Shown: piece after piece, positions 34,801-64,000 of the stretch | Layout: every line of letters begins with the position of its first letter | Position numbering within the stretch: the first letter of the stretch is position 1 | Assembly: GCA_044892525.1 (NCBI GenBank) | Contig: CM097888.1 | Location: 72,106,001-72,170,000, forward strand | Source of the DNA: Schmidtea polychroa | Lineage: Eukaryota | DNA length: 64,000 bases | Reading direction: 5' to 3' | Translations under genes and position numbers: made by a program | Notes under the pieces: generated by a model | What the model saw: only the letters and a program-made list of their open reading frames with translations | The model's database searches: none | What the model was told of the DNA's origin: nothing

Positions 34801-35973
34801 GGATTAATATCGCTGTGATAAAATGTGATATCAATTTCGAGTGGATTGACTGAAAAAACTAAAACTACTTTCATTTCCTAATTATGTTTCAATCAACATA
34901 AAATACGTTATCCAATGTCAAAAAATCACAAAAACAAGTCCACAAATTAATTTACATTTAAAATGTCCTTATAGTGAAATAAAATGGAGTCTTTTAAATA
35001 TTTTTGGGAAATACTTGATCTTATTATATTTTTTAATAGATATAAGTCGAAAATCTTTAATCTCAAGACATAGACAATGTTATAGATCTGGTTATATGCT
35101 TGACCAAGTATAGAAGAAACTTCATTTAAGATGTTATATCGGCGTAATTTATATATTTAAAAATAGATGTTGGTTATTTTGGAAATCATACATTCAAATT
35201 TCAAAACATCCCTGTAATAAAACAAATAATTTTTGCAATAAATATGTTGAAGAGTTAAGTTTTTAATAATAATGACCATTTCTCCTATTTAGCTTTTATG
35301 TCTTATAGCTTGCAATCACACAGTTTCAGCCAGTTAAAATTTTTTAATATTTTTACTTCAATAAATTTTTCTGTAAAAAATATTCTTACATCTTCTTTTG
35401 AATTTTGAAAGTTTTATCGCGCTTCAAGAAGTTTTGAAGGGTAAAAATAGAATATCTTCATATATGTTTATGAAATCTTTGAAGCTGTTCCGTTTCTCGA
35501 GCTTTTTTCAATTTTAAACTAGTTTCTGAGATTTCACAAAATATGTTAAACAATAAATAAATCAAGCTTAATTTAAAATAATATACAAATGGCAAAATTT
35601 ATAAGGGAAAAATTTACAATCAAGAAAGTATAATTTACAAGAATTTATCATAGAGAGATAGGAGCCGGAATAGCATAAAGTAACAATCAATTATGGAGAT
35701 AAAATTAAATTACGGACGATGAAATTATTTTAGTATTTCAGACTAAGTCAATTATTTATTATAAAAAAGGAGTGAAAGTCTCAGAAAAAGGCGTTAGATT
35801 CAAAATGTGTTATATGAGAAAAAACAGTAATAAATTTGGATTAGAATTTACAACCGATGAAAATTTAAGCGGCATGAGAATATTGCCATTTTGTTAAAAG
35901 CCGACCTGAACACTTTTAGAGAGGCCTGTCATATTTATCTGGTTGATTCCAGATTGATCCTCTACCTACCCTA

Positions 35974-36385
35974 CATGGGCGTCCGCAGGAATTTTTCCAA
36001 GGGGGGGGGGGCAAAAATATTATTTTTTAACAAGTAGACAATTTTTCTAAGGGGAAGAGAGTTGAAAAAATTTTCATGTGTTTAATAAATATTTGGGGCA
36101 TTATACAAAATAGGACTTTTTTTTATTAATTTACAAAGTAGAACACTTTTTTTAAAACCAGAACGACAGTTAATATTGAAAGTTTTATACAAATTAGATT
36201 ATTTGAAATCATTGATTTCCAGATATACATTAAAAAAAACAGGAAGCCTCTTTAAATTAAATTTTTTATTAATTTTTTTTGTTTTGTCTTGTATTTTTCC
36301 AACATTGTTTGAGCACATCTATTAAAATGTGTCGAAAATTAATCGAAAAATAGAATGGTTTGGGAAATTCAGGGGGACGCCCATG
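35974..36385. mobile_element. hAT MITE
   Basis: 11-bp perfect TIR CATGGGCGTCC and 8-bp TSD CTACCCTA (35966-35973 and 36386-36393). Confidence 0.9.
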
Positions 36386-38722: not shown

Positions 38723-41700
38723 CAGGGCTGGACTGGAAACACATTTAGGCCCGGGAAATATCGGTGACGTAGGTCCACAATATTAAATTTAAGAAAAAAA
38801 AATTTGAAAAAAGTACATTAGTAATTTATAATCGTATTTATTAAAATAATAAAAAAGAGTTTTTTTGATAATTGCAATCAAAATCAACATTAAGTAATTA
38901 AAAATAATTAAATAAATATTATTAATTAAACAAGTTTTTTTAATATTTCACTTTTTTCTCTCATTACCTCAATTACTCTATTATTGCCAATGTTATTTAG
39001 AATATCTTTTCACACGCCATGAGCATACATGCTTCCAAATGTTTCTGACCTAAACAATTTCTGAGTCAATTTAAAATATATTTTAACTTTGAAAAAGATC
39101 TCTCACAAGATACTTGTGTTGATGATAAATTAATAACAAATTTGTACGCTAAAAATAAATTTGAGTATGCTAGTGTATCCAGATGAACTTTTTGCAAAAA
39201 CTGTATAACAGCATAGAATACAATTTCTGCATAATTTGCATGATCTTACTGTATTAATCTGTTCATCATCTTCTTCATCACAAAACAATTCACTGCTATT
39301 ATCTGCTAGAGTACCATTAAAAACTTTCCACTTTTTTGAAAATCTATTAGTTCAGCTTTCAAAATTTTCTTCGTAATATTTTTATTTAATTTTTGATTTA
39401 TTAAATTAGTTAAAGGTTCAAAAATTATGATAAAATAAAAAAGTTTAACAAAAAACAATCCATTTATTACTTTATTTCATTTTTTTCGATTGACATATAT
39501 ATAAAAAAACAGAATTTATAAGAATGATTTTTTCCTGGCTTTCATGTCTGCAAATTTTTCTATTGCTGCCTCCAAATTTAGGTTTGCTACAACATTATTT
39601 TCAATTGAAATAATGGTCAAATTATTCAACCTATCTTCCGTCATAGTAGATCGCAAATACGTTTTTATTAGTTTTAATTTACTAAAACTTCTTTCACCAC
39701 TCGCAACACTAACAGGAATTGTTACGAGGATTCGTAAAGCCACCCACAGATTTGGTACTGTAATTAATTCGTTTTGTATAGTTTTTCCACAATAATGAAC
39801 ATGAATTTCTTGTGAGACCACCCTGCGCAAATGCTCATTTAATGGTAAATCAAATTTTCCTAGAAGTTCAACAAGGCCTAAAAAATTTCCATTATGCGGA
39901 AGAAATAACTTATCACAAGAACCCCGAAATGCTAAATTATTTTTTGACAAAAATAATTTTATGTTTATTAATCTTTCTAGTACCTTTTTCCAATTATATT
40001 TTTCTTGGACTATCAAAGACTGCAAATTCTTATCAATAGTTTTATTGCCTTTTAATCTTAATCGAGTTTCTATCCAGTTTTTTTCACATTTTAAATGTGA
40101 AACTGACCGTTCGTGCATTTTCAAGCTGTCGTGAATATTTTTCCAATCCGATAAACCAGATTTGGCTAGATTTGACCTACCTGATGGATTAAAAAGTTTG
40201 CAAAAAAAACAAAATACAGAATTTTTGGATTCTGAATAGTGCAACCATTTTCTTAGGAATTTTTCACCATTACTTATTTGACGATAAAAAAGCGAATTGG
40301 AAAAGCTTCGATTATTTTCATCTCTTGGATAAATATGTTGTTGATTACACCTTTCTTCGTTTCCATATAAGTCCGTTACAACTATATGGTCAATTTCCGT
40401 ATGTTTTAAATTTTGTGGCCATAGCCCAATATCATTATAATTTAAAATATTTTCAAATACAGAATGAGTTGAATCACTAGGAACAATTATTTCAGTTCCG
40501 TGAGAAGACATTAAATTATCCTCATTGATAATATTACAATTTTCAGCTTCTGATGACACATTACCTATATCGTCTTCTGAGCTTGAAGATGTTGACTCGA
40601 AATGTTGATTATCATCGGCTACTGATTTACTGGAATTAAAATATTTCAATATTTTATCGTGCTTATCAGCTTGTTGTTGTCTATTTATTTTTCGTTTCCG
40701 ATATTCATACCCACTCAATTTTTTTGGTGGCATCTTAGCTATGGCATAAATTTATATAAATATATTATATATTTTCCAATATATTTTTAAAAAATGATCT
40801 TAATCTTACCTTACCTCTTATATATTTATATTTTTAAAACAGAATAGGAATACAAATTTAATTTGAACAAACTGCAACAACACATTAGTTACACACACGA
40901 AACAAAAAAAATTGTTAAAAAAAACTGGTAGCTATAGCTGTTAATTTAACTCGCACATCAGTTTTTGTAATACATACATATAATTTTTTTTTATTTCAAT
41001 TTTCAATACATATCAGAATTTCTCAGAATTGGAAATTCGTATATTTTGCATGTACTTTTTTTTTTGTTTTTTCTTATTTTCAATTTTTTTTAAAACGGTT
41101 GGTTTCATAGATAAATTTCAAAATATAAAGTTTTGGAGGCTTATTTTATAATTTACTTTGATTGTTTATAATAAATTTTGGCGCCCTCTAAAAAAAGGCA
41201 CCCTAGGCTATGGCCTAGGTCGCCTGGCCCTTGGGCCGGGCCTGGTGACTAGGTATATTAATACTTGAAATTTGTAGGAAATTATTTGGATCTAAATAGA
41301 ATATATCATTATAAAGAGGATCATTTTTTAAAAATCGTACATTCATGAAACTGGTAACTGCATCCATTATAACATTATAAAAACTTATACAAAATCTATC
41401 GTTAGAATTACCCGTTCTATTTCTTTTATGTTTTTGACATAACATTGTTTCAATTTCAATTCCGATTTCTCTCTTGTCTAGTTCTTTGTTTGCAGCCAAT
41501 GCAAAATTTACTGCTGCTTGATATACAGTATCAAAATCTCTTTGTATTTTAAAAAGATTTTTAGTCGAATTTTTACCATACCAAATGCAATTGCAATATC
41601 CATACCTGATGTTTGTAAGTATGATGACAAAGTTGTTGTTTCTTCAAATATTCGTAAATATATTTGAGCTGTTAAAATAATATCAAATTATAGAAACGTG

Positions 41701-54049: not shown

Positions 54050-54853
54050 AACGATATGTCAATTAATAAAATCGATCAATAATGCTGATACAACTTATAA
54101 ACTGGTTTGGCAGGGCTATCCAATTTTAATCATTTGTACAACCGATTTAGATAGGCATTTTCATTCGTTTGGCCTAGGCATATGTACCAATGAAAAAACT
54201 GCTGATTTTAATTTTATTGTTTCAAGTATCAATATTGGCTTGAAAAAAATAAATGCATCATTATTCAATCCTCGTGTATTGATTTCTGATGCCTCTAACG
54301 CTATACGTAAAGCTTATTCACAAGTTTTTGATAAAAATGAAATTGTGATGTGTTGGGCACATATGCGTAGAAATTGTATCAAAAAAATCGAGTCTTTAGT
54401 AGCTAAAGAAGATCAAAACGAATTAATTGAAGATGTAGATCAACTTCAATTGTCACAAAGCCAAGTCATTTTTGAAAAAGCAAGTTCTCTATTTTTTAAA
54501 AAATGGAGACAAAAAAAGCGACTGAGTTTTTAGACTATATGAATATGATGTGGCTTACGACACACAATACGTGGTATGAAGGATACATGCCCTTCAGGCC
54601 AAGTACTAACAATAATCTAGAGTCAAATAATCGAGTTCTTAAAGACGAAGAAACTATTAGAGAGCGCACGCCATTATCTAGATTTAGCAAACAAGCTTTA
54701 GATACTGTTAAAAAGTGGTCACTAGCATTCGATCAATTTACGAAGCGAGCTTTTACTGTCTGGCGCATTAATTTATCAAACGATAAAGCCAATTTGGCCG
54801 ACGGTCAGTGCAATTGTCCAGCATTTTTAAAAAAATTTATTTGCAAGCATGTT
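54050..54853 (+). pseudogene. MULE transposase fragment truncated inside its SWIM finger
   Basis: ADTTYKLVWQGYP, ISDAS, MCWAHMRR, PSTNNNLESNNRVLK, CNCPAFLKKFICKHV. One frameshift near 54520; similarity ends abruptly after CKHV at 54853. Confidence 0.85.
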
Positions 54854-55197
54854 AGTAGGTAGTTAGTGGCTTACGGCAGCAATAGGGGGGGGGGGGTAAA
54901 AAATGTTGCAAACTTTTGATTGCATAACTTTTTCCGTAGACATTTTTTGATTACATAATTGTTGCCGTAATGCCCAATGTTTTCTGGGATTTTAAATACA
55001 AATTTTTTTTTTTTTTTTTTTTCAATAAACAAGCCAAGGATAAATATTATTTGGGTGGGTCTCCTTGGTCCTGAGAATTTCAATAGAAAAAGGTAGTCTT
55101 CAATAAAAAAGCATGGATTTTTCACACTATAGTGAGGGGATCTTCTTGGTCATGAGAATTTCAATAGAAAAGGTGGTTTACATTAAAAAAACGCATA

Positions 55198-55830
55198 GTA
55201 AATTTTTAAAATAAAGCAAATTATGGGTCTAAAATTTAAAAATAAAGTAAATGATGGGTCTAAAAATTTAAGTAAATCAAGGTTCAGATTTATTTTTGAA
55301 ATAAAGTAAATTATGGTCTAAATAAGTAAATTATGGGCTAAGATTTTTCAATTAAAGTAAATAATGGTTCTAAAAAATTAAATTACAGTAAATTATGGTC
55401 CAAATTTTTAAATTAAAGTAAATTATGGTTCTTAAAAATTAAATTAAAGTAAATTATGGTCAAAATTTTTGAATTACAGTCCAAAAATTTAAATTAAAGT
55501 AAATTATGATCCAAATTTTTAAATTAAAGTAAATAATGGTTCTAAAAAATTAAATTAAAGTAAATAATGGTCCAAATATTTTAAATTACAGTAAATAATG
55601 GTTCTAAAAATTAAATTACAGTAAATAATGGTCAAAAATTTTAAAATTAAAGTAAATTATGGTTCTAAAAATTAAATTACAGTAAATAATGGTCAAAAAT
55701 TTTAAAATTAAAGTAAATTATGGTTCTAAAAATTAAATTAAAGTTAATTAAGGTCAAAAATTTTAAAATTAAAGTAATAATTTTTAAATAAGTAAATTAA
55801 AGTAATGTAATAAGTAAATTAAAGTAAGAT
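55198..55830. repeat. Subterminal minisatellite, about 30-bp monomer with a 61-bp higher-order unit
   Basis: About 20 units of AAATTA(A/C)AGTAAAT(A/T)ATGGT...; 55621-55681 is repeated at 55682-55742. Confidence 0.85.
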
Positions 55831-55854
55831 TTTTAAATTTATTAACAAAAATAG

Positions 55855-56013
55855 AAGGTGTTTGAGAATTGAAATTTTTTAATGGAAATTTTAATGAATT
55901 ATTTTTTAAGTAATTTTTAATAGAAATTTTTATGAATAATTTTCAATGGTAATTTTAAATGGAAATTTTAATAGAATAATTTTTAAGATAATTTTTAATG
56001 AAAATTTTTATGA

Positions 56014-56048
<35 letters not shown>

Positions 56049-56190
56049 TAATATTAATAATATATCAACCAAATACTATACAACACATAAAAAATTAACT
56101 AAACACATAAAAATAACTAGACACATAACAAAACATATAAACATTAACTAAACACATAAAAATGAACTAGACACATAACAAACATAAAAA
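55855..56190. repeat. Short degenerate tandem repeats between the satellite and the polB 3' end
   Basis: TTTTAATGGAAA-like 12-13-mers, an (AAT)n run, and ACACATAA..AACTA units. Confidence 0.7.
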
Positions 56191-56235
56191 TTTACCAAAT
56201 AACAAATGTAAAGATATAAAATTTATTTAATAAAA

Positions 56236-59200
56236 TTAGTCCTCATCGGACAAAATAACGTCATCGATATCGATGTCATCTTCTCCAAAATCTTCATTTA
56301 ATTCTTCCTCATCTTCTCCATCATTTTCTCCAACATTTTCTGAAACATTTTCTGCAACAATTTCTCCAACATTTTCTCCAATATTTAATTCACTTAATCT
56401 TACATGCCCATATGCAAGACTAGTATTTTTCCCCACCCAAACCCTTTTGTCATCTTTGTTAGTTAGTGCTATTTTTGTGTTTTTAATTGTAAAAATTTGA
56501 TGATTTTTGCTTGTTATTTTAGTCTGAGGAACCGAAAAAATCTGGTTAGTGTTATAACAATCCAGGTATGACTGATGTTTTATGTCACTACCTTTCAATG
56601 TTACACCTTTAGCCTTTTTTGTTTCCTCATCACTCAACAAGCTATAACATTTAGGTCTAAGAAAAACCCACTCCTTATATTTAAGACCTTTATTCTCGTC
56701 TTTGAACTTTCCAATGACTGAATCAAGGTTCTTACTATATAAGGAATGACAACTATTGTAATTGGAAGTATCCAATAAATTATCTCGAACCATTGCAGGT
56801 AAAAGAACCTCAAGTTTGCAGTTAATGACTTCGAGGAAAAAAGAATCTGTATCACCTGCAACGATATTAATTTTACAATTAAACTCATTGCGAATTGATT
56901 CCAGATCCTTATATTGCAATTCATACATTCTAAGTTTAGATAGATCAAGTACAGATTGACCAATGTAACTCGGTCTATCTAAACATATAGAATCTGAATT
57001 CAATAGTGCTGCAATTAAATTATCTGCTATTTTAATAGATTTTTTAAAAGTTGGTTTTGACGAATATTTAACTAATTTACCGGCAGTTGTACAAAGACGA
57101 AGATTCATTCTTCTCTTTAAATTTTCAACTGTTTTGCCGTATAAACTATTATTTAGCAATTTATAATAATTTTTATCTAAGCTATTTACGCTTTTTGATC
57201 TTAATTCAGTATTTGTATCTATATATTTTTTAAAAATTGGTGATTGCTTAAATCTTACACCCCTATTTACACGTGTTACTTTAACACCAAGTTCCAAATA
57301 TAATTTTAATAATCTCCAATGAATAACATAATTAGATTTTGGAAGATGAGTTAATAATAATTTTTCAACCTTAGACCCAGCAGGTTTCATTTTTTCAGCA
57401 GCTACAGGGAAATCATCCAACTTATCATGAAGCTCAGAAGGAATTACAAGATCAACTTCAAGTGTGTATCCATAAGACAAAGATTCAAGATTTAAATTCC
57501 TACATTCATCCATTATTTTATCAAATCCATCAAGAACCCAACAAAATTCGCCACAAGGTAATGATTGACTTAAAGCCCAGCCATAAAGATTATTAATATC
57601 TATATATAGTAACTCAGTGTTCTCGTCGGTTTTTACGTAATGCTTATTCACAAAAGTAAGACCGCCTCTTATTCCACCCTCATAAAAGCTAAACATTTCG
57701 TTTTCAGTTATGAGTTCAATTGGTTCATTTAAAGACATTAATGCAGAAGACCAAGACATGCCTGGAATTCCGAAATAATTCAATGGTTCCAATCTATTGT
57801 GAGCAATGGATTTCAACCGAAACTGATGAAAGAAATCAGCCAAAAGAAAACAATCAAGTTTTAGGTAGATCATCATATAATCTAATAAAGTTACGCAATT
57901 AGTTTCTACCCAAATCTCCTGAGCTTTTTCATACTCAAGCTCAGTGACACCCTCCCAGATTGGTGGTAATTCATAAGTAGTTTGGAGAATATCTAAAGAA
58001 GTGGCGAAATTATAAGGGAAGATTCCTTTTTCACTTACTATGGTGCCAGAAAAAGCAGAATTAGTAAAAGGCAAAGAATTCAAAGTTTTGACTGCTTTAG
58101 CCAAAGAATCATTGACAAATTGATACGAATCAATGAATCTTAGGCTAATTTTACCTAAATGAGCAATCAAAGATATAAATTTTTCCGTAGTTATTGGGAT
58201 GCACCCTAAATTCCAATTTTTAAATTTATTTAATCCATATTTAAGTATATGGTGCATATCGTATCCCTTCAAGTTGTGAAATACGATAGGCAAAATTTTA
58301 TTTATTTTTCTATTTACGTTACATGTGCTACAAGCTGCACCCAAGTATTTCCCCATAAAATGATCGTGATCTCTAACAGGATCCACGATAGATTTCAAAC
58401 AAAGATAACAAACCGTTGAATTAATGAATTGTTGTTGCTCAATTTTCGTTAATTTAATCATTGGTTTCCTACCCATTTTATAATAAAAAGGAAGAACCTT
58501 ATTTAATGCTATATCCTCTATAGCACTTAAAAAACTCTCGACGCAATCTAAACCTATGAACTGCTGATAAGATTTAGATCCGTCAAAGTTATTTACTAGT
58601 AAAAGACCAGCAGATATTGGCATGTGTCGCTGAAAATGATCATTATCAGAAGGTAAAATAGCCTCAAAATCGGCATAAACTACAAAAGGAGGAGTTACTG
58701 TTTTCGACCAGTCAGTAAACTGTAAGAATTTATTTTGAGGGAAAGTATAAAGAGTTGTTCCTAATTGATTACGTTTGCATAATATTTCATGTTTTTCTAG
58801 TGCGTTTCTATTATTAAACCCATTCAAACACCGATGGCACCATAATGAACGTATGCGTGTAGGACAAGTAGTGTTGATACCACAATTCAATAACCTATTT
58901 AAATTGCTTATAGCAACGTAATGGAAATTGTTCCCTTTATTTAATAATAGTAAATTAATTACAGTTCCATTTAAAACTTTGGAACGATGTATAATGTCTA
59001 AATGTGGGTGTTTTAAAACGTAATTATCTATTAATTGTTTGTTATTGTCATAAGAAAAAACGTTAATTATTAAACCAGGATTTTTGGCCTCGAATTTTCT
59101 AATATCTTTTAATTTCATGGGTAAGTCCAATGGATTATATATTAATTCAGATAAATTATAACTGGATGTCCTATTTCTAGCATAACTACTAACCTCATCA

Positions 59201-60577
59201 TATTTTAAAATAGCTAAAATGCTATATAAAAAACATGAATCATCGGTGTTTTTTATATTAATTAAACAATATTTATTTTTTAGATAAGTAGGTAGTTCAA
59301 TGAAACTCCTACCACTTAATCTACTTAGCCTACTTATCTTTGTTATGGTGAAGTGAATTTCTGTTATTTTTTTTATGATCCAGCTACTTCCTAACTCTGT
59401 GATATTACTTATTTTCTCGTTTAGTTCCCTAATGCCTTCGTCAAAAAATGATGCAGTTAAAGGCTTTGCATAATTTGAGATATTATTAACCTTTATTTCC
59501 CCGTCTTTTTCAAATTCGATTGTTATTCCGAATTGAATTTTGACGGAGACTAATTCGTTAATAATATCTCGTAATTTTTTTATTAGTTGTTCAGGAAATA
59601 TTATTTCTTTTATATTTAAGTCGCTTGTATTTAAGCTTAATATTTGATGGGTACCTCTTAGATCTTTTTGTATTATTGGAACATTTCCACCTATTTGTAT
59701 TATATTTAATCCATCCCAAGAGTCAAGGGAAATATTATCTAATCCGACCTGGGATTCAACAACCAATCCATCATGGGATTCGACAACCAATCCATCATTG
59801 GATTCCACAAAAGGCAATCCGACCTGGGATTCAAAAGAAGAAGTATCTAATTTAATTTTTTTATTTTTATTATTTTTTTCTATAGTTGAGGGTCTTTTAA
59901 AAACACTATCTTTTTTAAAATTAAACCTATCTAAATGATTTTTATGTTTATTATAAAAAACGCTATATGTTACGGGGTCACTAGTCTTACATACGGGACA
60001 TATAAAATAAGTTTTATTATAATATTTTTTTGTGTAATAATTCTCCATTATAGAATGGCAATTATTATCATGTTCTTTCGATGAACAATAATTTGGGTAA
60101 AGTATACCTATAAAATAAAAATTTAATAAAAAAAATATAATTTAAATGAAATATTTTAGTAAATGTTTACGCAAAAATTTGCAAATTATTATTATTTTAC
60201 AAATTTTATTTACTAAAAAATAAAAATTTACTAAATTAAAAATATTAACATTTACTTAAATAAAAAATTATATTAAATTTCCTTTAAATTATAAAAAGTA
60301 ATCAATACTTACATTGTAAATTTTCATTTCGATTTATTGACACATTGACATAATTTTTTTCTTTATTCGTATTACCTAAATTATTAATTAATTAAATCAA
60401 TAAATTAAAAATTATGTTTACTTTTTCTTTTCAAATTTCCTTTAATCTTAGATTTTAAATTGTCTTCATTAATATTATCTAAATTAATTAATAAATTAAT
60501 TAATAAATAAATTAAAATTTACCAAATTTCTGAATTTTTTCTCGGACATTCATAACGTTTTCTATTAAAGAATTCAT
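56236..60577 (-). CDS. polB: Protein-primed family B DNA polymerase, left-arm copy, spliced, about 1348 aa
   Basis: Exons 60577-60523, 60478-60422, 60375-60313 and 60107-56236 join in frame, adding 78 aa to the 1270-aa ORF. Exo I YADFE, Exo II HNLKGYD, Exo III YLKLD, motif A DINNLYG, motif B KLLNNSLYGK, motif C AGDTDS, plus KCY and KAKGV. EndoVII insert at 58318-58410. No stops or frameshifts. Confidence 0.95.
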
Positions 60578-60616
60578 TTTTAAAGGTTAACTATTTGTTA
60601 AATGTGACTAATGATT

Positions 60617-60720
60617 GATTATTGTTTATAGATTATTATTGTTTATAGATTATTATTGTTTATAGATTATTATTGTTTATAGATTATTATTATTGTTCAT
60701 AGGAACAAATTCTAACCAAT
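60617..60720 (-). promoter_or_regulatory. Putative polB promoter, left arm
   Basis: CCAAT element at 60716-60720 and four 17-bp repeats each containing TATAAA, 40-140 bp upstream of the ATG at 60577. Confidence 0.55.
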
Positions 60721-61205
60721 CAAAATCAAGGAAGGGTAGGAAAAAATTAATTTATTTTAAAACACATTTTGACGCTAAAGTTGACTTATTTAACATTTTC
60801 ATAATAATTTAATAAAAATAATGTGATGAACCCACAAAGTAATATCATTTTTCATCAAATTGCAAAACAGTAATAACGTTTTCATAAAATTGTAACAAAG
60901 TAATAACATATTTCAGATAAATTTTCAACAGTTGTAAAATATTTAAGCAAATTGTAACAAGATTAGAAAATATTACAACAAAGTAGTAACATATTTCAGA
61001 AAATTTCAACAAAGTTGTAAAATATTTATCAAATTGTAACTAAAATAATAAAAATATTGCAACAAAGTAATAAAATAATAATGGTAATTAAGACAAATCA
61101 ATACATTATTTCGAAGATGGACAACAAATTAAAAAGAATATTGTAACTAAAATAATAAAAATATTGCAACAAAGTAATAAAATAATACAACATTTTAAAC
61201 TCTAG

Positions 61206-61770
61206 ATCAATCCATTTTATAGAAAATTAAATTTTATCTATATAATATATGAATAAATATCCAAGGAAATTACGTTAACGTATAATAAATACAAATTTAT
61301 CGTAAAAACATGTGTGTATTACACACAAAACAAGATACATAATTTCTAATCAATCCATTTTATAGAAAATTAAATTTTATCTATATATTATATGAATAAA
61401 ATCCTAAGAAAATTACGTTAACTGTATAATAAATACAAATTTATCGTAAAAACATGTGTGTATTACACACAAAACAAGATACATAATTTCTAATCAATCC
61501 ATTTTATAGAAAATTAAATTTTATCTATATATTATATGAATAAAATCCTAAGAAAATTACGTTAACTGTATGAAAAATACAAATTTATCATAAAAACATG
61601 TGTGTATTACACACAACATACGAGACATAATTTTTAATCAAGCTATTTTATAGAAAATTAAATTTTATCTATATAATATATGAATAAAAATCCAAGAAAA
61701 TTACGTTAACCGCGCGAAAAACTACAAATTTATTGTAAAAACATGTGTGCATTACACACAAAGCATCAAA
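61206..61770. repeat. Four ~144-bp tandem repeats with internal palindromes, left arm
   Basis: Unit starts at 61206, 61349, 61493 and 61637. Each holds TGTGTGTA-T-TACACACA (one substitution in unit 4) and TACGTTAAC(GTA). Confidence 0.9.
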
Positions 61771-61899
61771 CTGAAATTGTAATTGCGCCATGTTGTAGAG
61801 AATTAAATTCTGCCTATACATTGTTACACTTAAATCTCGATCAGACATGTGAAAAGAGACATAAAAGAGAAAGAACAGTAGAGTAGTATGATTGGGGCC

Positions 61900-61979
61900 A
61901 TCCAGACCAGGTCACCGCCAGGCCACATATACCCTCTCCCCCCCCCCCCCCCCTGTGTGTAAAATAATGAGGCCAAGCG
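61900..61979. other. 80-bp asymmetric GC-rich spacer at the palindrome axis
   Basis: Non-palindromic, with a C16 run at 61938-61953 and several GGCC motifs. Flanked by ...AGTAGAGTAGTATGATTGGGGCC and GGCCCCAATCATACTACTCTACT.... Confidence 0.9.
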
Positions 61980-62108
61980 GGCCCCAATCATACTACTCTA
62001 CTGTTCTTTCTCTTTTATGTCTCTTTTCACAGGTCTGATCGAAATTTAAGTGTAACAATGTATAGGCAGAATTTAATTCTCTACAACACGGCGCAATTAC
62101 AATTTCAG

Positions 62109-62673
62109 TTTGGTGCTTTGTGTGTAATGCACACATGTTTTTACAATAAATTTGTATTTTTTCGCGCGCTTAACGTTATTTTCTTGGATTTTTATTCATT
62201 TAATATATAGATAAAATTTAATTTTCTATAAAATAGCTTGATTAAAAATTATGTCTCGTATGTTGTGTGTAATACACACATGTTTTTACGATAAATTTGT
62301 ATTTTTCATACAGTTAACGTAATTTTCTTAGGATTTTATTCATATGATATATAGATAAAATTTAATTTTCTATAAAATGGATTGATTAGAAATTATGTCT
62401 CGTATGTTGTGTGTAATACACACATGTTTTTACGATAAATTTGTATTTATTATACAGTTAACGTAATTTTCTTAGGATTTTATTCATATAATATATAGAT
62501 AAAATTTAATTTTCTATAAAATGGATTGATTAGAAATTATGTATCTTGTTTTGTGTGTAATACACACATGTTTTTACGATAAATTTGTATTTATTATACG
62601 TTAACGTAATTTCCTTGGATATTTATTCATATATTATATAGATAAAATTTAATTTTCTATAAAATGGATTGAT
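62109..62673. repeat. Four ~144-bp tandem repeats, right-arm mirror
   Basis: Reverse complement of 61206-61770 with about 12 substitutions. Confidence 0.9.
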
Positions 62674-63158
62674 CTAGAGTTTAAAATGTTGTATTATTTT
62701 ATTACTTTGTTGCAATATTTTTATTATTTTAGTTACAATATTCTTTTTAATTTGTTGTCCATCTTCGAAATAATGTATTGATTTGTCTTAATTACCATTA
62801 TTATTTTATTACTTTGTTGCAATATTTTTATTATTTTAGTTACAATTTGATAAATATTTTACAACTTTGTTGAAATTTTCTGAAATATGTTACTACTTTG
62901 TTGTAATATTTTCTAATCTTGTTACAATTTGCTTAAATATTTTACAACTGTTGAAAATTTATCTGAAATATGTTATTACTTTGTTACAATTTTATGAAAA
63001 CGTTATTACTGTTTTGCAATTTGATGAAAAATGATATTACTTTGTGGGTTCATCACATTATTTTTATTAAATTATTATGAAAATGTTAAATAAGTCAACT
63101 TTAGCGTCAAAATGTGTTTTAAAATAAATTAATTTTTTCCTACCCTTCCTTGATTTTG

Positions 63159-63262
63159 ATTGGTTAGAATTTGTTCCTATGAACAATAATAATAATCTAT
63201 AAACAATAATAATCTATAAACAATAATAATCTATAAACAATAATAATCTATAAACAATAATC
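63159..63262 (+). promoter_or_regulatory. Putative polB promoter, right arm
   Basis: ATTGG at 63159-63163, CTATAAACAATAATAAT units starting at 63197, 63214, 63231 and 63248, Inr-like TCATTAGTC, ATG at 63302. Confidence 0.55.
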
Positions 63263-63301
63263 AATCATTAGTCACATTTAACAAATAGTTAACCTTTAAA
63301 A

Positions 63302-64000
63302 ATGAATTCTTTAATAGAAAACGTTATGAATGTCCGAGAAAAAATTCAGAAATTTGGTAAATTTTAATTTATTTATTAATTAATTTATTAATTAATTTAG
63401 ATAATATTAATGAAGACAATTTAAAATCTAAGATTAAAGGAAATTTGAAAAGAAAAAGTAAACATAATTTTTAATTTATTGATTTAATTAATTAATAATT
63501 TAGGTAATACGAATAAAGAAAAAAATTATGTCAATCTGTCAATAAATCGAAATGAAAATTTACAATGTAAGTATTGATTACTTTTTATAATTTAAAGGAA
63601 ATTTAATATAATTTTTTATTTAAGTAAATGTTAATATTTTTAATTTAGTAAATTTTTATTTTTTAGTAAATAAAATTTTTAAAATAATAATAATTTGCAA
63701 ATTTTTGCGTAAACATTTACTAAAATATTTCATTTAAATTATATTTTTTTTATTAAATTTTTATTTTATAGGTATACTTTACCCAAATTATTGTTCATCG
63801 AAAGAACATGATAATAATTGCCATTCTATAATGGAGAATTATTACACAAAAAAATATTATAATAAAACTTATTTTATATGTCCCGTATGTAAGACTAGTG
63901 ACCCCGTAACATATAGCGTTTTTTATAATAAACATAAAAATCATTTAGATAGGTTTAATTTTAAAAAAGATAGTGTTTTTAAAAGACCCTCAACTATAGA
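63302..64000 (+). CDS. polB: Protein-primed DNA polymerase B, right-arm copy (5' part; runs off the window)
   Basis: Exons 63302-63356, 63401-63457, 63504-63566 and 63772 onward give MNSLIENVMNVREK...LQCILYPNYCSSKEHDNNCHSIMENYYTKK...FKRPSTI. Identical to the left copy except one V/L change in exon 3. Confidence 0.92.

What the first reader, a model, noticed from the sequence alone, without database searches (positions are those of the whole stretch)
54854..64000. Candidate new replicon: a PolB-only Polinton-like element that is one large palindrome
Seen: from the AGTAG terminus to the axis (7046 bp) the only gene is an intact pPolB, and everything from the axis to the window end mirrors it, including a second divergent polB. 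Known: Polintons usually have TIRs under about 1 kb and encode integrase, ATPase, protease and capsids; none is visible here. Inference: a ~14.2-kb element whose inverted repeats are its entire arms, or an integrated head-to-head replication dimer of a ~7.1-kb minimal linear replicon, replicating with its own polymerase and borrowing an integrase. The intact ORF among decayed transposons suggests youth or selection. I do not recall such an architecture being described, but I could not search.
Basis: partly seen in the sequence, partly recalled or inferred. Interest (0 to 1): 0.95.

Follow-up and report, generated by a model that had tools for sequence, protein, structure and literature searches.

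The report
Palindromic polB-only Polinton derivative
A virus-like transposon (Polinton/Maverick) that has kept only its DNA polymerase gene sits here as a 7.1-kb unit joined to a mirror-image copy of itself; this is most likely a one-off snap-back product of a defective element, not a demonstrated new kind of replicon.

Summary
The fold-back is real but only partly visible. The arms 59879-61899 and 61980-64000 (2,021 nt each) differ by 17 substitutions and no indels. They flank an 80-nt, GC-rich, non-palindromic centre, and the mirror runs off the window end. The only gene is an intact 1,270-aa protein-primed polymerase (56236-60048, minus strand). All catalytic motifs are conserved and its N-terminal fold matches adintovirus polymerases. 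The second copy shows only its first 56 codons, which are identical. Relatives (up to 64% identity) sit in ordinary complete Polintons with integrase, ATPase, protease and capsid-size genes. None of the 87 related loci carries a long palindrome.

New here: the composite signal "AGTAG, 5-70 nt, G-run of 10 or more" occurs exactly twice in the window, in inverted orientation, at 54854 and 62002. These two sites bound a 7,149-bp unit. In 1.7 Mb of fetched DNA it occurs once more, at the polB-adjacent end of relative L062. The axis therefore lies in the unit's inner terminal module.

Best reading: a polB-only deletion derivative of an animal-type Polinton copied back on itself at a terminal hairpin, then integrated into a MULE transposase gene. 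No evidence shows a propagating family or free forms. An assembly artefact is not excluded.

The parts
54503..54862 (+). Left flank: C-terminal piece of a MULE-type transposase ORF (SWIM zinc finger), interrupted by the element. It is a neighbour, not part of the element.
   Evidence: Pfam SWIM E=9.4e-6, profile positions 2-30 of 38, ending at the last residues of the ORF; sequence.
54854..62002 (-). Unit A: one complete 7,149-bp polB-only unit bounded by two inverted terminal modules.
   Evidence: The composite pattern AGTAG + 5-70 nt + G-run >=10 occurs only at 54854(+) and 62002(-) in the window, and only once (L062) in 1.69 Mb of fetched loci.
54854..54970 (+). Outer terminal module. It starts AGTAGGTAGT, carries a G12 run at 54885-54896, and has a 13-nt inverted repeat (54871-54883 / 54958-54970) bracketing the run.
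   Evidence: The IR was reached in 0 of 2000 shuffles and at 39 of 2000 random window places. The DNA fold has z=-3.3. A 16-mer plus G-run is shared with the polB-adjacent end of L062. None of 163 chance sites of the 16-mer has a G-run.
55199..56194 (.). Subterminal tandem repeats between the polB stop and the outer terminus (31/61-bp units about 8-16 times, 12/39-bp, 19/49-bp arrays); no ORF.
   Evidence: L062 has 154-bp repeats in the same position.
56236..60048 (-). Intact protein-primed family B DNA polymerase, 1,270 aa: N-terminal TP-like and vOTU-like region, exonuclease, endonuclease VII-like insert, and polymerase.
   Evidence: 943 homologues, best 64% identity. One search shows the invariant exonuclease, polymerase A/B/C and KxY motif residues, plus Cys272/His376. 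One search gives PF03175 in 11 of 22 and PF02945 in 20 of 22 family members. The AF2 model has pLDDT 74.6. Foldseek matches adintovirus proteins at E=7e-22 and gives weak Y-family little-finger hits, as PMC11161782 describes for TP domains.
60613..61762 (.). Tandem repeats upstream of polB: 17 bp x4.6, 30/83 bp, and 144 bp x3.9. They are mirrored at 62118-63266.
61877..62002 (-). Inner terminal module and palindrome centre. It consists of a 23-nt inverted repeat (61877-61899 / 61980-62002) that begins AGTAGAGTAGT, and an 80-nt loop with a G16 run on the minus strand.
   Evidence: The single-strand DNA fold gives -29.8 kcal/mol, z=-7.4.
61900..61979 (.). Non-palindromic 80-nt centre, 61% GC against 20% GC in the arms, with a C16 run at 61938-61953.
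   Evidence: Similar C/G runs lie 200-400 nt upstream of polB in relatives L003, L005 and L009.
59879..61899 (.). Left arm of the visible inverted repeat.
61980..64000 (.). Right arm of the visible inverted repeat; it runs off the window end.
63831..64000 (+). Start of the second, mirror-image polB. Its first 56 codons are identical to the first copy; the rest lies outside the window.

Best explanation
The window holds an integrated, defective derivative of an animal-type (adintovirus-like) Polinton/Maverick that has lost every gene except the polymerase.

Shown: one complete 7,149-bp unit (54854-62002) carries an intact pPolB between two stretches of tandem repeats. The unit ends in two terminal modules of the same design: an AGTAG-type end motif, a G-run 31-49 nt inside, and a short inverted repeat bracketing the run. 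Directly after the inner terminus (62002) the sequence continues as an inverted copy of the unit's own interior. The two copies therefore share one inner module, with the 23-nt repeat as stem and the 80-nt segment as loop.

Inferred: this is the product expected if the 3' end of a free linear unit folded back on its terminal hairpin and was extended along its own strand (snap-back, or equivalently replication round a hairpin end). The result would be a palindromic dimer of about 14.2 kb with two identical outer ends. That molecule was then inserted into a MULE transposase gene by an integrase supplied in trans. The polymerase gene encodes the whole replication module (TP-like, vOTU-like, exonuclease, polymerase), but the element cannot integrate or be packaged on its own. 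It is most likely a recent one-off event, not an established lineage.
For: - Arms and asymmetric centre.
- Substitution-only differences between the arms.
- Terminal-module composite found only at 54854(+), 62002(-) and the end of L062.
- Bracketing inverted repeats and hairpin folds.
- In L062 the same end motif and G-run lie about 1.45 kb past the polB stop, after tandem repeats, as in the window.
- No host DNA lies between the terminus at 62002 and the mirrored interior.
- Sharp junction with the SWIM ORF at an AGTAG end. Maverick end motif (AGT)2 and 6-bp TSDs: PMC8097293.
- Intact polymerase with conserved motifs and adintovirus-like N-terminal fold. TP-vOTU architecture: PMC11161782.
- Relatives are complete Polintons, so loss of genes is the derived state.
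- Short inverted repeats next to a free DNA end are an established route to large palindromes with a non-palindromic centre (Tetrahymena rDNA, yeast, mammalian cells): PMC2444050 and PMC5182062.
Against: - Only 2.0 kb of the second copy is visible. The outer right end, a target-site duplication and the rest of the MULE gene cannot be checked.
- There is a single locus. No second copy exists in the window and the source genome was not found in any collection.
- The two terminal modules share design but little sequence: only the first ~11 nt and the G-run align.
- Whether the 23-nt inverted repeat existed before the fold-back cannot be told from the product.
- Arm differences are concentrated near the axis (15 in the inner 699 nt, 2 in the outer 1,322 nt, p=7.5e-6). 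This has no firm explanation and could reflect assembly trouble at a palindrome centre.
- Most relatives have polB reading inward from the nearest element end, the opposite of the window.
Confidence: 0.42

Rival explanations
1. One reading: a propagating family of minimal replicons. Either 7.1-kb linear units or 14.2-kb palindromes replicate with their own pPolB and regularly borrow an integrase.
For: The polymerase gene is intact and encodes TP-like, vOTU-like, exonuclease and polymerase parts. The unit has terminal modules at both ends. A distant relative, L062, also has polB directly next to the same kind of terminus with only tandem repeats between. In L005 a 15-nt inverted repeat brackets a C11G10 run between two divergent polB genes, a geometry like the window's centre.
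Against: There is no second copy in the window. None of 87 related loci has a long palindrome. No relative was found in IMG/VR. The ~7-kb metagenome contigs that were checked are fragments with capsid-size or other genes. L062 shows only the 3' end of polB, so it does not demonstrate a polB-only element. The two polBs of L005 are only 50% identical, so they are not a replication dimer.
Confidence: 0.13
2. Assembly artefact: a chimeric fold-back read or a mis-join created the mirror image, and only one copy exists in the organism.
For: Fold-back chimeras are a known failure of long-read and amplified libraries (own knowledge). The mirror runs to the window end, so a contig end cannot be excluded. 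Differences between the arms pile up next to the axis. The centre is compositionally odd, at 61% GC.
Against: The arms differ by 17 substitutions and no indel across homopolymer-rich DNA, which looks like two physical copies rather than read errors. The 80-nt centre is not foreign: it has the same design as the outer terminus (G-run bracketed by a short inverted repeat, preceded by an AGTAG motif). C/G runs upstream of polB recur in relatives from independent assemblies.
Confidence: 0.13
3. Chromosomal inverted duplication after integration: a single 7.1-kb unit integrated first. A later break at its right end then folded back at the hairpin-prone module and copied the unit, and then the host flank, in inverted orientation.
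For: It uses the same short-inverted-repeat mechanism (PMC2444050). It needs no free palindromic molecule and no second integration step.
Against: It requires a break exactly at the element's terminus (62002) with loss of all right-hand host DNA. It predicts a mirrored MULE gene and a large terminal rearrangement. A monomer with unlike ends would have had to integrate first.
Confidence: 0.12
4. Two independent insertions of the same element head to head, 80 bp apart.
For: L005 shows two different polB genes head to head, so such neighbours occur.
Against: Both arms stop at exactly the same nucleotide of the element. The inner ends do not carry the outer terminal sequence in the orientation expected for termini. 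Instead the 80 nt complete a terminal module for one copy only.
Confidence: 0.04

Closest known systems
Polintons / Mavericks and adintoviruses (animal-type)
   Same: The polymerase is homologous (up to 64% identity) to pPolBs that sit in complete elements with rve integrase, A32-like ATPase, C48 protease and ~407-aa capsid-size genes. The N-terminal fold matches adintovirus proteins. The AGTAG end resembles the (AGT)2 end motif (PMC8097293). The element is integrated in a host genome.
   Different: No integrase, ATPase, protease or capsid gene is present. The ends of the unit are unlike in sequence. The inverted repeat, if complete, is the whole 7-kb arm, against the reported 46-1,447 bp (PMC8097293).
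pPolB-plus-TIR Polinton remnants without integrase in C. elegans (10.1101/2024.01.15.575659)
   Same: These are partial copies from the polB end of a Polinton, with a terminus but no integrase, and they are involved in local inversions.
   Different: They are described as remnants next to other rearranged pieces, not as a unit with two terminal modules duplicated as a palindrome.
Large palindromes formed from a short inverted repeat next to a free DNA end (Tetrahymena rDNA minichromosome; yeast and mammalian amplicons)
   Same: Long, nearly identical arms surround a short non-palindromic centre flanked by a short inverted repeat (PMC5182062, PMC2444050).
   Different: Those are host sequences processed by host repair or programmed breakage. 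Here the substrate would be the end of a virus-like linear DNA, and the product is integrated.
Snap-back / inverted-repeat defective genomes of protein-primed adenoviruses (own knowledge: Daniell 1976; Daniell and Mullenbach 1978, the latter listed among the references of PMC13506859)
   Same: One terminal part of the genome is duplicated in inverted orientation, so that both ends carry the same origin; internal genes are lost.
   Different: Those are known from virus particles in cell culture, not as integrated copies. I could not read the primary papers.
Concatemer junctions of hairpin-ended or hairpin-primed replicons (parvoviruses, poxviruses); terminal palindromes proposed to prime replication in endogenous virophages/PLVs of Halocafeteria (10.64898/2026.07.28.741278)
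   Same: The centre has the form stem-loop-stem in duplex form, as in a copied hairpin end.
   Different: In Halocafeteria the terminal palindromes go with elements that lack pPolB. Here the element has a pPolB, and no resolvase or nickase is seen.
Cytoplasmic and mitochondrial linear plasmids with pPolB
   Same: They are small linear replicons whose replication module is a TP-fused pPolB (PMC11161782).
   Different: They are extrachromosomal, have ordinary terminal inverted repeats, and usually carry an RNA polymerase or other genes. No free form is shown here.

Membership tests
Polinton / Maverick | Protein-primed family B DNA polymerase | tested here: met
   There are 943 homologues, best 64% identity. 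PF03175 matches 11 of 22 aligned relatives. Exonuclease and polymerase motif residues are invariant. The window's own protein does not reach Pfam thresholds.
Polinton / Maverick | Retrovirus-like (rve) integrase | tested here: not met
   No match in the window to the integrases of relatives L003, L004 or L005. The unseen part of the right arm is predicted to mirror the left and so to lack it too.
Polinton / Maverick | Morphogenesis module (major and minor capsid proteins, packaging ATPase, maturation protease) | tested here: not met
   tblastn with 43 neighbour proteins of relatives found nothing. The non-coding parts hold no ORF above 59 aa.
Polinton / Maverick | Terminal inverted repeats of about 50-1,500 bp | tested here: inconclusive
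   The 7.1-kb unit shares only ~11 nt plus a G-run between its ends. The palindromic dimer would have whole-arm repeats, but its right end is outside the window.
Polinton / Maverick | 5'-AG/AGT-type end motif | tested here: met
   The left end starts AGTAGGTAGT at the break in the SWIM ORF. The reported motifs are (AGT)2 and (AG)3 (PMC8097293).
Polinton / Maverick | Target-site duplication of 5-8 bp (usually 6) | not testable with these tools
   The right junction (predicted near 69025) lies outside the window, and the source genome was not found.
Polinton-type pPolB architecture (TP, vOTU, exonuclease, palm; PMC11161782) | N-terminal TP-like domain with the little-finger fold, followed by a Cys/His vOTU-like domain | tested here: met
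   The AF2 model of residues 1-450 (pLDDT 74.6) has a beta-beta-alpha-beta-beta-alpha-beta unit at residues 125-237. Foldseek hits to Y-family little-finger domains are weak (prob up to 0.96, E about 0.02). The match to an adintovirus protein has E=7e-22. Cys272 and His376 are invariant. No direct OTU hit was obtained in the PDB.
Fold-back (snap-back) palindrome | Long, nearly identical inverted arms around a short non-palindromic centre | tested here: met
   2,021-nt arms at 99.2% identity with an 80-nt centre.
Fold-back (snap-back) palindrome | Pre-existing short inverted repeat next to a free end | tested here: inconclusive
   The 23-nt repeat at 61877-61899 / 61980-62002 contains the end motif, but in the product it cannot be separated from the arms. 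The outer terminus has its own 13-nt bracketing repeat, which shows that such repeats belong to the module.
Autonomous linear replicon (linear-plasmid-like) | Existence as free linear DNA with protein-capped ends; more than one copy | not testable with these tools
   Only one integrated locus is seen. No other copy exists in the window. No palindromic or polB-only complete relative was found among 87 loci.

The most novel reading that the evidence does not exclude
Some animal Polintons may replicate their linear DNA through hairpin-forming terminal modules (end motif, homopolymer G/C run, short bracketing inverted repeat). Palindromic dimers would then be regular intermediates. A polB-only unit with two such modules would be a minimal self-replicating derivative that spreads by borrowing integrase and capsid from full elements. 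The window would be the first integrated snapshot of such an intermediate. The G/C runs seen in either orientation upstream of polB in relatives would be flip/flop forms of the loop.
Probability: 0.12. Interest if true: 0.8.

Novelty: new variant of a known kind. Interest (0 to 1): 0.5.

Why it matters
How Polintons and Mavericks copy their DNA has never been observed; protein-primed replication of a free linear form is inferred only from gene content. An integrated palindromic dimer whose centre is one of the element's own terminal modules would be a sequence-level trace of a free linear intermediate and of fold-back synthesis at its end. It would also define terminal signals (end motif, G-run, bracketing repeat) that can be searched for in other genomes.

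For genome annotation, it shows that a lone intact polB can belong to a bounded unit rather than a random remnant. A divergent pair of identical polB genes is also a likely source of double-stranded RNA and local instability. If it proves to be a one-off or an assembly error, it is a curiosity.

Tried and rejected
- Exact-sequence look-up of the polB product to recover the source contig and the unseen right arm: not on record. The best database hit is 64% identical, so the source genome is not in the collections.
- IMG/VR scan with the polB alignment: no relative.
- Scans of viral and prokaryotic collections with the 16-mer end motif: only chance matches. I used them as a control: 163 sites, none followed by a G-run.
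- PDB sequence searches with the protein and with the family profile: nothing meaningful.
Bcl-2 in relative L003 and the adintovirus fold match point to animal hosts for the family.
- Idea that ~7-kb metagenome contigs are free polB-only monomers: rejected, since they carry further genes or are cut.
- Idea that the arms' inner ends are true termini of two insertions: rejected on motif orientation.
- A classical TIR between the two non-coding parts of the unit: not found.
- The (TACC)n array after polB in L250, and L041/L071, as further termini: uninformative.
- The primary adenovirus paper could not be read.
Full report
OBSERVATION

The window (27% GC overall) contains an inverted repeat with arms 59879-61899 and 61980-64000 (2,021 nt, 99%), separated by 80 nt. 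An ungapped mirror comparison gives 17 substitutions (6 transitions, 11 transversions) and no indel. The 80-nt centre is not palindromic (16 of 80 self-complementary positions). It is 61% GC against 20% in the arms and holds a C16 run. The right arm runs off the window end, so only 2.0 kb of the claimed 7.0-kb mirror is visible. By symmetry the structure would end at 69025 and span 14,172 bp.

THE GENE

ORF 56236-60048 (minus strand) is open for 1,270 aa. Pfam gives no significant hit to it directly, and PDB sequence searches are empty. It does have 943 homologues, the best 64% identical, and many of them carry PF03175 and PF02945. In a 22-sequence alignment, 11 members match DNA_pol_B_2 and 20 match Endonuclease_7.

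The residues of the exonuclease motifs, of polymerase motifs A, B and C, and of KxY are invariant and present in the window's protein. So are Cys272 and His376 in the N-terminal part. An AlphaFold2 model of residues 1-450 (pLDDT 74.6) matches adintovirus proteins in BFVD (E=7e-22). It also weakly matches the little-finger domains of Y-family polymerases in the PDB. That is the fold reported for the terminal-protein domain of Polinton pPolBs, which is followed by a vOTU-like Cys/His protease (PMC11161782). The gene is therefore an intact, ordinary animal-type Polinton/adintovirus polymerase with its priming domain fused.

WHAT ELSE IS IN THE ELEMENT

Nothing recognisable. tblastn with 43 proteins encoded next to polB in relatives finds no other match in the window. 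The non-coding parts hold only tandem repeats and ORFs of at most 59 aa. The second polB starts at 63831, and its 56 visible codons are identical to the first copy. No other copy of any part of the element occurs in the window.

RELATIVES

Where enough flank is available, contigs carrying the closest polymerases are ordinary Polintons. They carry C48 protease, rve integrase, A32-like ATPase and a ~407-aa capsid-size ORF, and in some also Bcl-2 and TBP homologues. Of 87 related loci, none has a long palindrome. Only L005 has two polB genes head to head, and these are only 50% identical to each other. Contigs of about 7 kb are fragments, not polB-only units. Loss of all other genes is therefore the derived state here.

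THE TERMINI

The left boundary is sharp. The flanking ORF 54503-54862 is a SWIM zinc finger whose Pfam match stops at profile position 30 of 38, at the junction. The element begins AGTAGGTAGT, close to the (AGT)2 end motif of vertebrate Mavericks (PMC8097293).

A 16-mer spanning this end, followed by a G11-12 run, is shared with one relative, L062. In both, it lies 1.35-1.45 kb beyond the polB stop codon, after tandem repeats. By contrast, 163 chance occurrences of the 16-mer in prokaryotic and viral contigs never have a G-run after them. The four bases just outside the AGTAG are also the same in both. They belong to the SWIM codons in the window, so this may reflect a target preference (n=2).

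The composite "AGTAG, 5-70 nt, G-run of 10 or more" occurs exactly twice in the window, at 54854 on the plus strand and at 62002 on the minus strand. It occurs once in 1.69 Mb of all fetched loci, at the L062 end. Both window sites also have a short inverted repeat bracketing the G-run:
- 13 nt with 74 nt between at the outer end (0 of 2000 shuffles and 39 of 2000 random window places reach it; fold z=-3.3);
- 23 nt with 80 nt between at the centre.

Apart from the first ~11 nt and the G-run, the two modules do not align. I conclude that 54854-62002 is a bounded 7,149-bp unit with two terminal modules of the same design, and that the palindrome's centre is the inner module.

HOW THE PALINDROME AROSE (INFERENCE)

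Immediately after the inner terminus (62002) the sequence is the inverted copy of the unit's interior, starting next to the internal 23-nt complement. That is the product expected if the 3' end of a free linear unit paired with the internal complement and was extended along its own strand, or equivalently if a hairpin end was copied round. Short inverted repeats beside a free end are an established source of large palindromes with a non-palindromic centre (PMC2444050, PMC5182062). Terminal hairpin priming has also been proposed for endogenous virophages and PLVs (10.64898/2026.07.28.741278).

The dimer has two identical outer ends, unlike the monomer. This would suit an integrase supplied in trans. 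The absence of host DNA between 62002 and the mirrored interior favours formation before integration. A break exactly at the terminus after integration is the less economical alternative.

WHAT DOES NOT FIT, OR REMAINS OPEN

- Fifteen of the 17 arm differences lie in the inner 699 nt and two in the outer 1,322 nt (p=7.5e-6). One cluster matches a neighbouring 144-bp repeat unit, suggesting exchange among units, but four differences lie in unique sequence next to the centre. This could reflect error-prone synthesis, uneven homogenisation, or assembly trouble.
- Most relatives have polB reading inward from the nearest element end, whereas in the window and L062 its 3' end faces the conserved terminus.
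- C/G runs lie 200-400 nt upstream of polB in L003, L005 and L009, in either orientation.
- In L005 a 15-nt inverted repeat brackets a C11G10 run between the two polB genes. The meaning of these runs is unknown.
- The host organism is not identified.

RIVALS

- An assembly artefact is made less likely by the substitution-only differences and by the native design of the centre, but it is not excluded.
- A propagating family of minimal replicons has no support from copy number or from relatives.
- Two independent insertions are contradicted by the identical arm ends and by the motif orientation.

COMPARISON WITH KNOWN SYSTEMS, AND VERDICT

This is a Polinton/Maverick derivative by its polymerase and end motif. 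It fails the integrase and capsid-module criteria, so it is non-autonomous. polB-plus-terminus remnants are known in C. elegans (10.1101/2024.01.15.575659). A bounded polB-only unit duplicated as a whole-arm palindrome through its own terminal module is not described in the papers I could search. I rate it a new variant of a known kind and of moderate interest, pending the sequence to the right of the window and read-level support.

SLIP

While considering the artefact hypothesis I twice recalled sequencing-adapter sequences from memory in my reasoning.

Noticed in passing
window 36001-36011 (context 35950-36050): This is a third long homopolymer run (G11) in the window. It is preceded by a CTACCTACC-type motif in the opposite orientation to the element's terminal modules. 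It may be a decayed terminus of another element, or chance.
   Followed up: partly
L005 2200-2900 (ERZ25039515 contig_28610): Two different polB genes (50% identical to each other, one of them 5'-truncated) lie head to head. Between them are a 33-nt tandem array and a C11G10 run, bracketed by a 15-nt inverted repeat 102 nt apart. The geometry resembles the window's centre, but without mirror-image arms.
   Followed up: partly
L003 145-155; L009 1-10 and 866-875; L004 13249-13263; L062 2361-2371: Runs of 10-15 C (on the polB-sense strand) recur 200-400 nt upstream of polB or near the far end of related elements. In three cases a T-run plus A comes just before the C-run. Their function is unknown.
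   Followed up: partly
window 54848-54853 and L062 2404-2409: The bases just outside the AGTAG end are nearly the same in the two unrelated insertion sites (C-N-T-G-T-T). This may be a target-site preference; n=2.
   Followed up: no
window 61201-61899 versus 61980-62678: Arm-to-arm differences are concentrated next to the axis (15 of 17 in the inner 699 nt). One cluster of four matches the variant of the neighbouring 144-bp repeat unit.
   Followed up: partly
L003 12382-12759 and 12985-13431; L005 7583-8161: Relatives carry Bcl-2 and TATA-binding-protein homologues as accessory genes. This fits animal hosts and the report of Bcl2 homologues in adintoviruses (PMC8502044).
   Followed up: no
window 39516-40733 (-): A 405-aa ORF of a hAT-family (ZMYM1-like) transposase carries the C-terminal dimerisation domain. 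Its best relatives are 34-59% identical and occur in both animals and plants.
   Followed up: partly
window 3494-51649 (ten runs): There are ten runs of N, each 132-497 nt long. None lies inside the element.
   Followed up: no
L250 6551-6605: A (TACC)n microsatellite starts 35 nt after the polB stop of a 48%-identical relative. On the other strand it reads like a reiterated AGTAG/GTAG end motif. Whether it marks a terminus is unclear.
   Followed up: partly
window 56310-56386 and 59741-59834: In-frame 12-nt and 24-nt tandem repeats lie inside polB. They encode an acidic C-terminal tail and a repetitive segment in the low-confidence N-terminal linker (residues 43-121 of the model).
   Followed up: no
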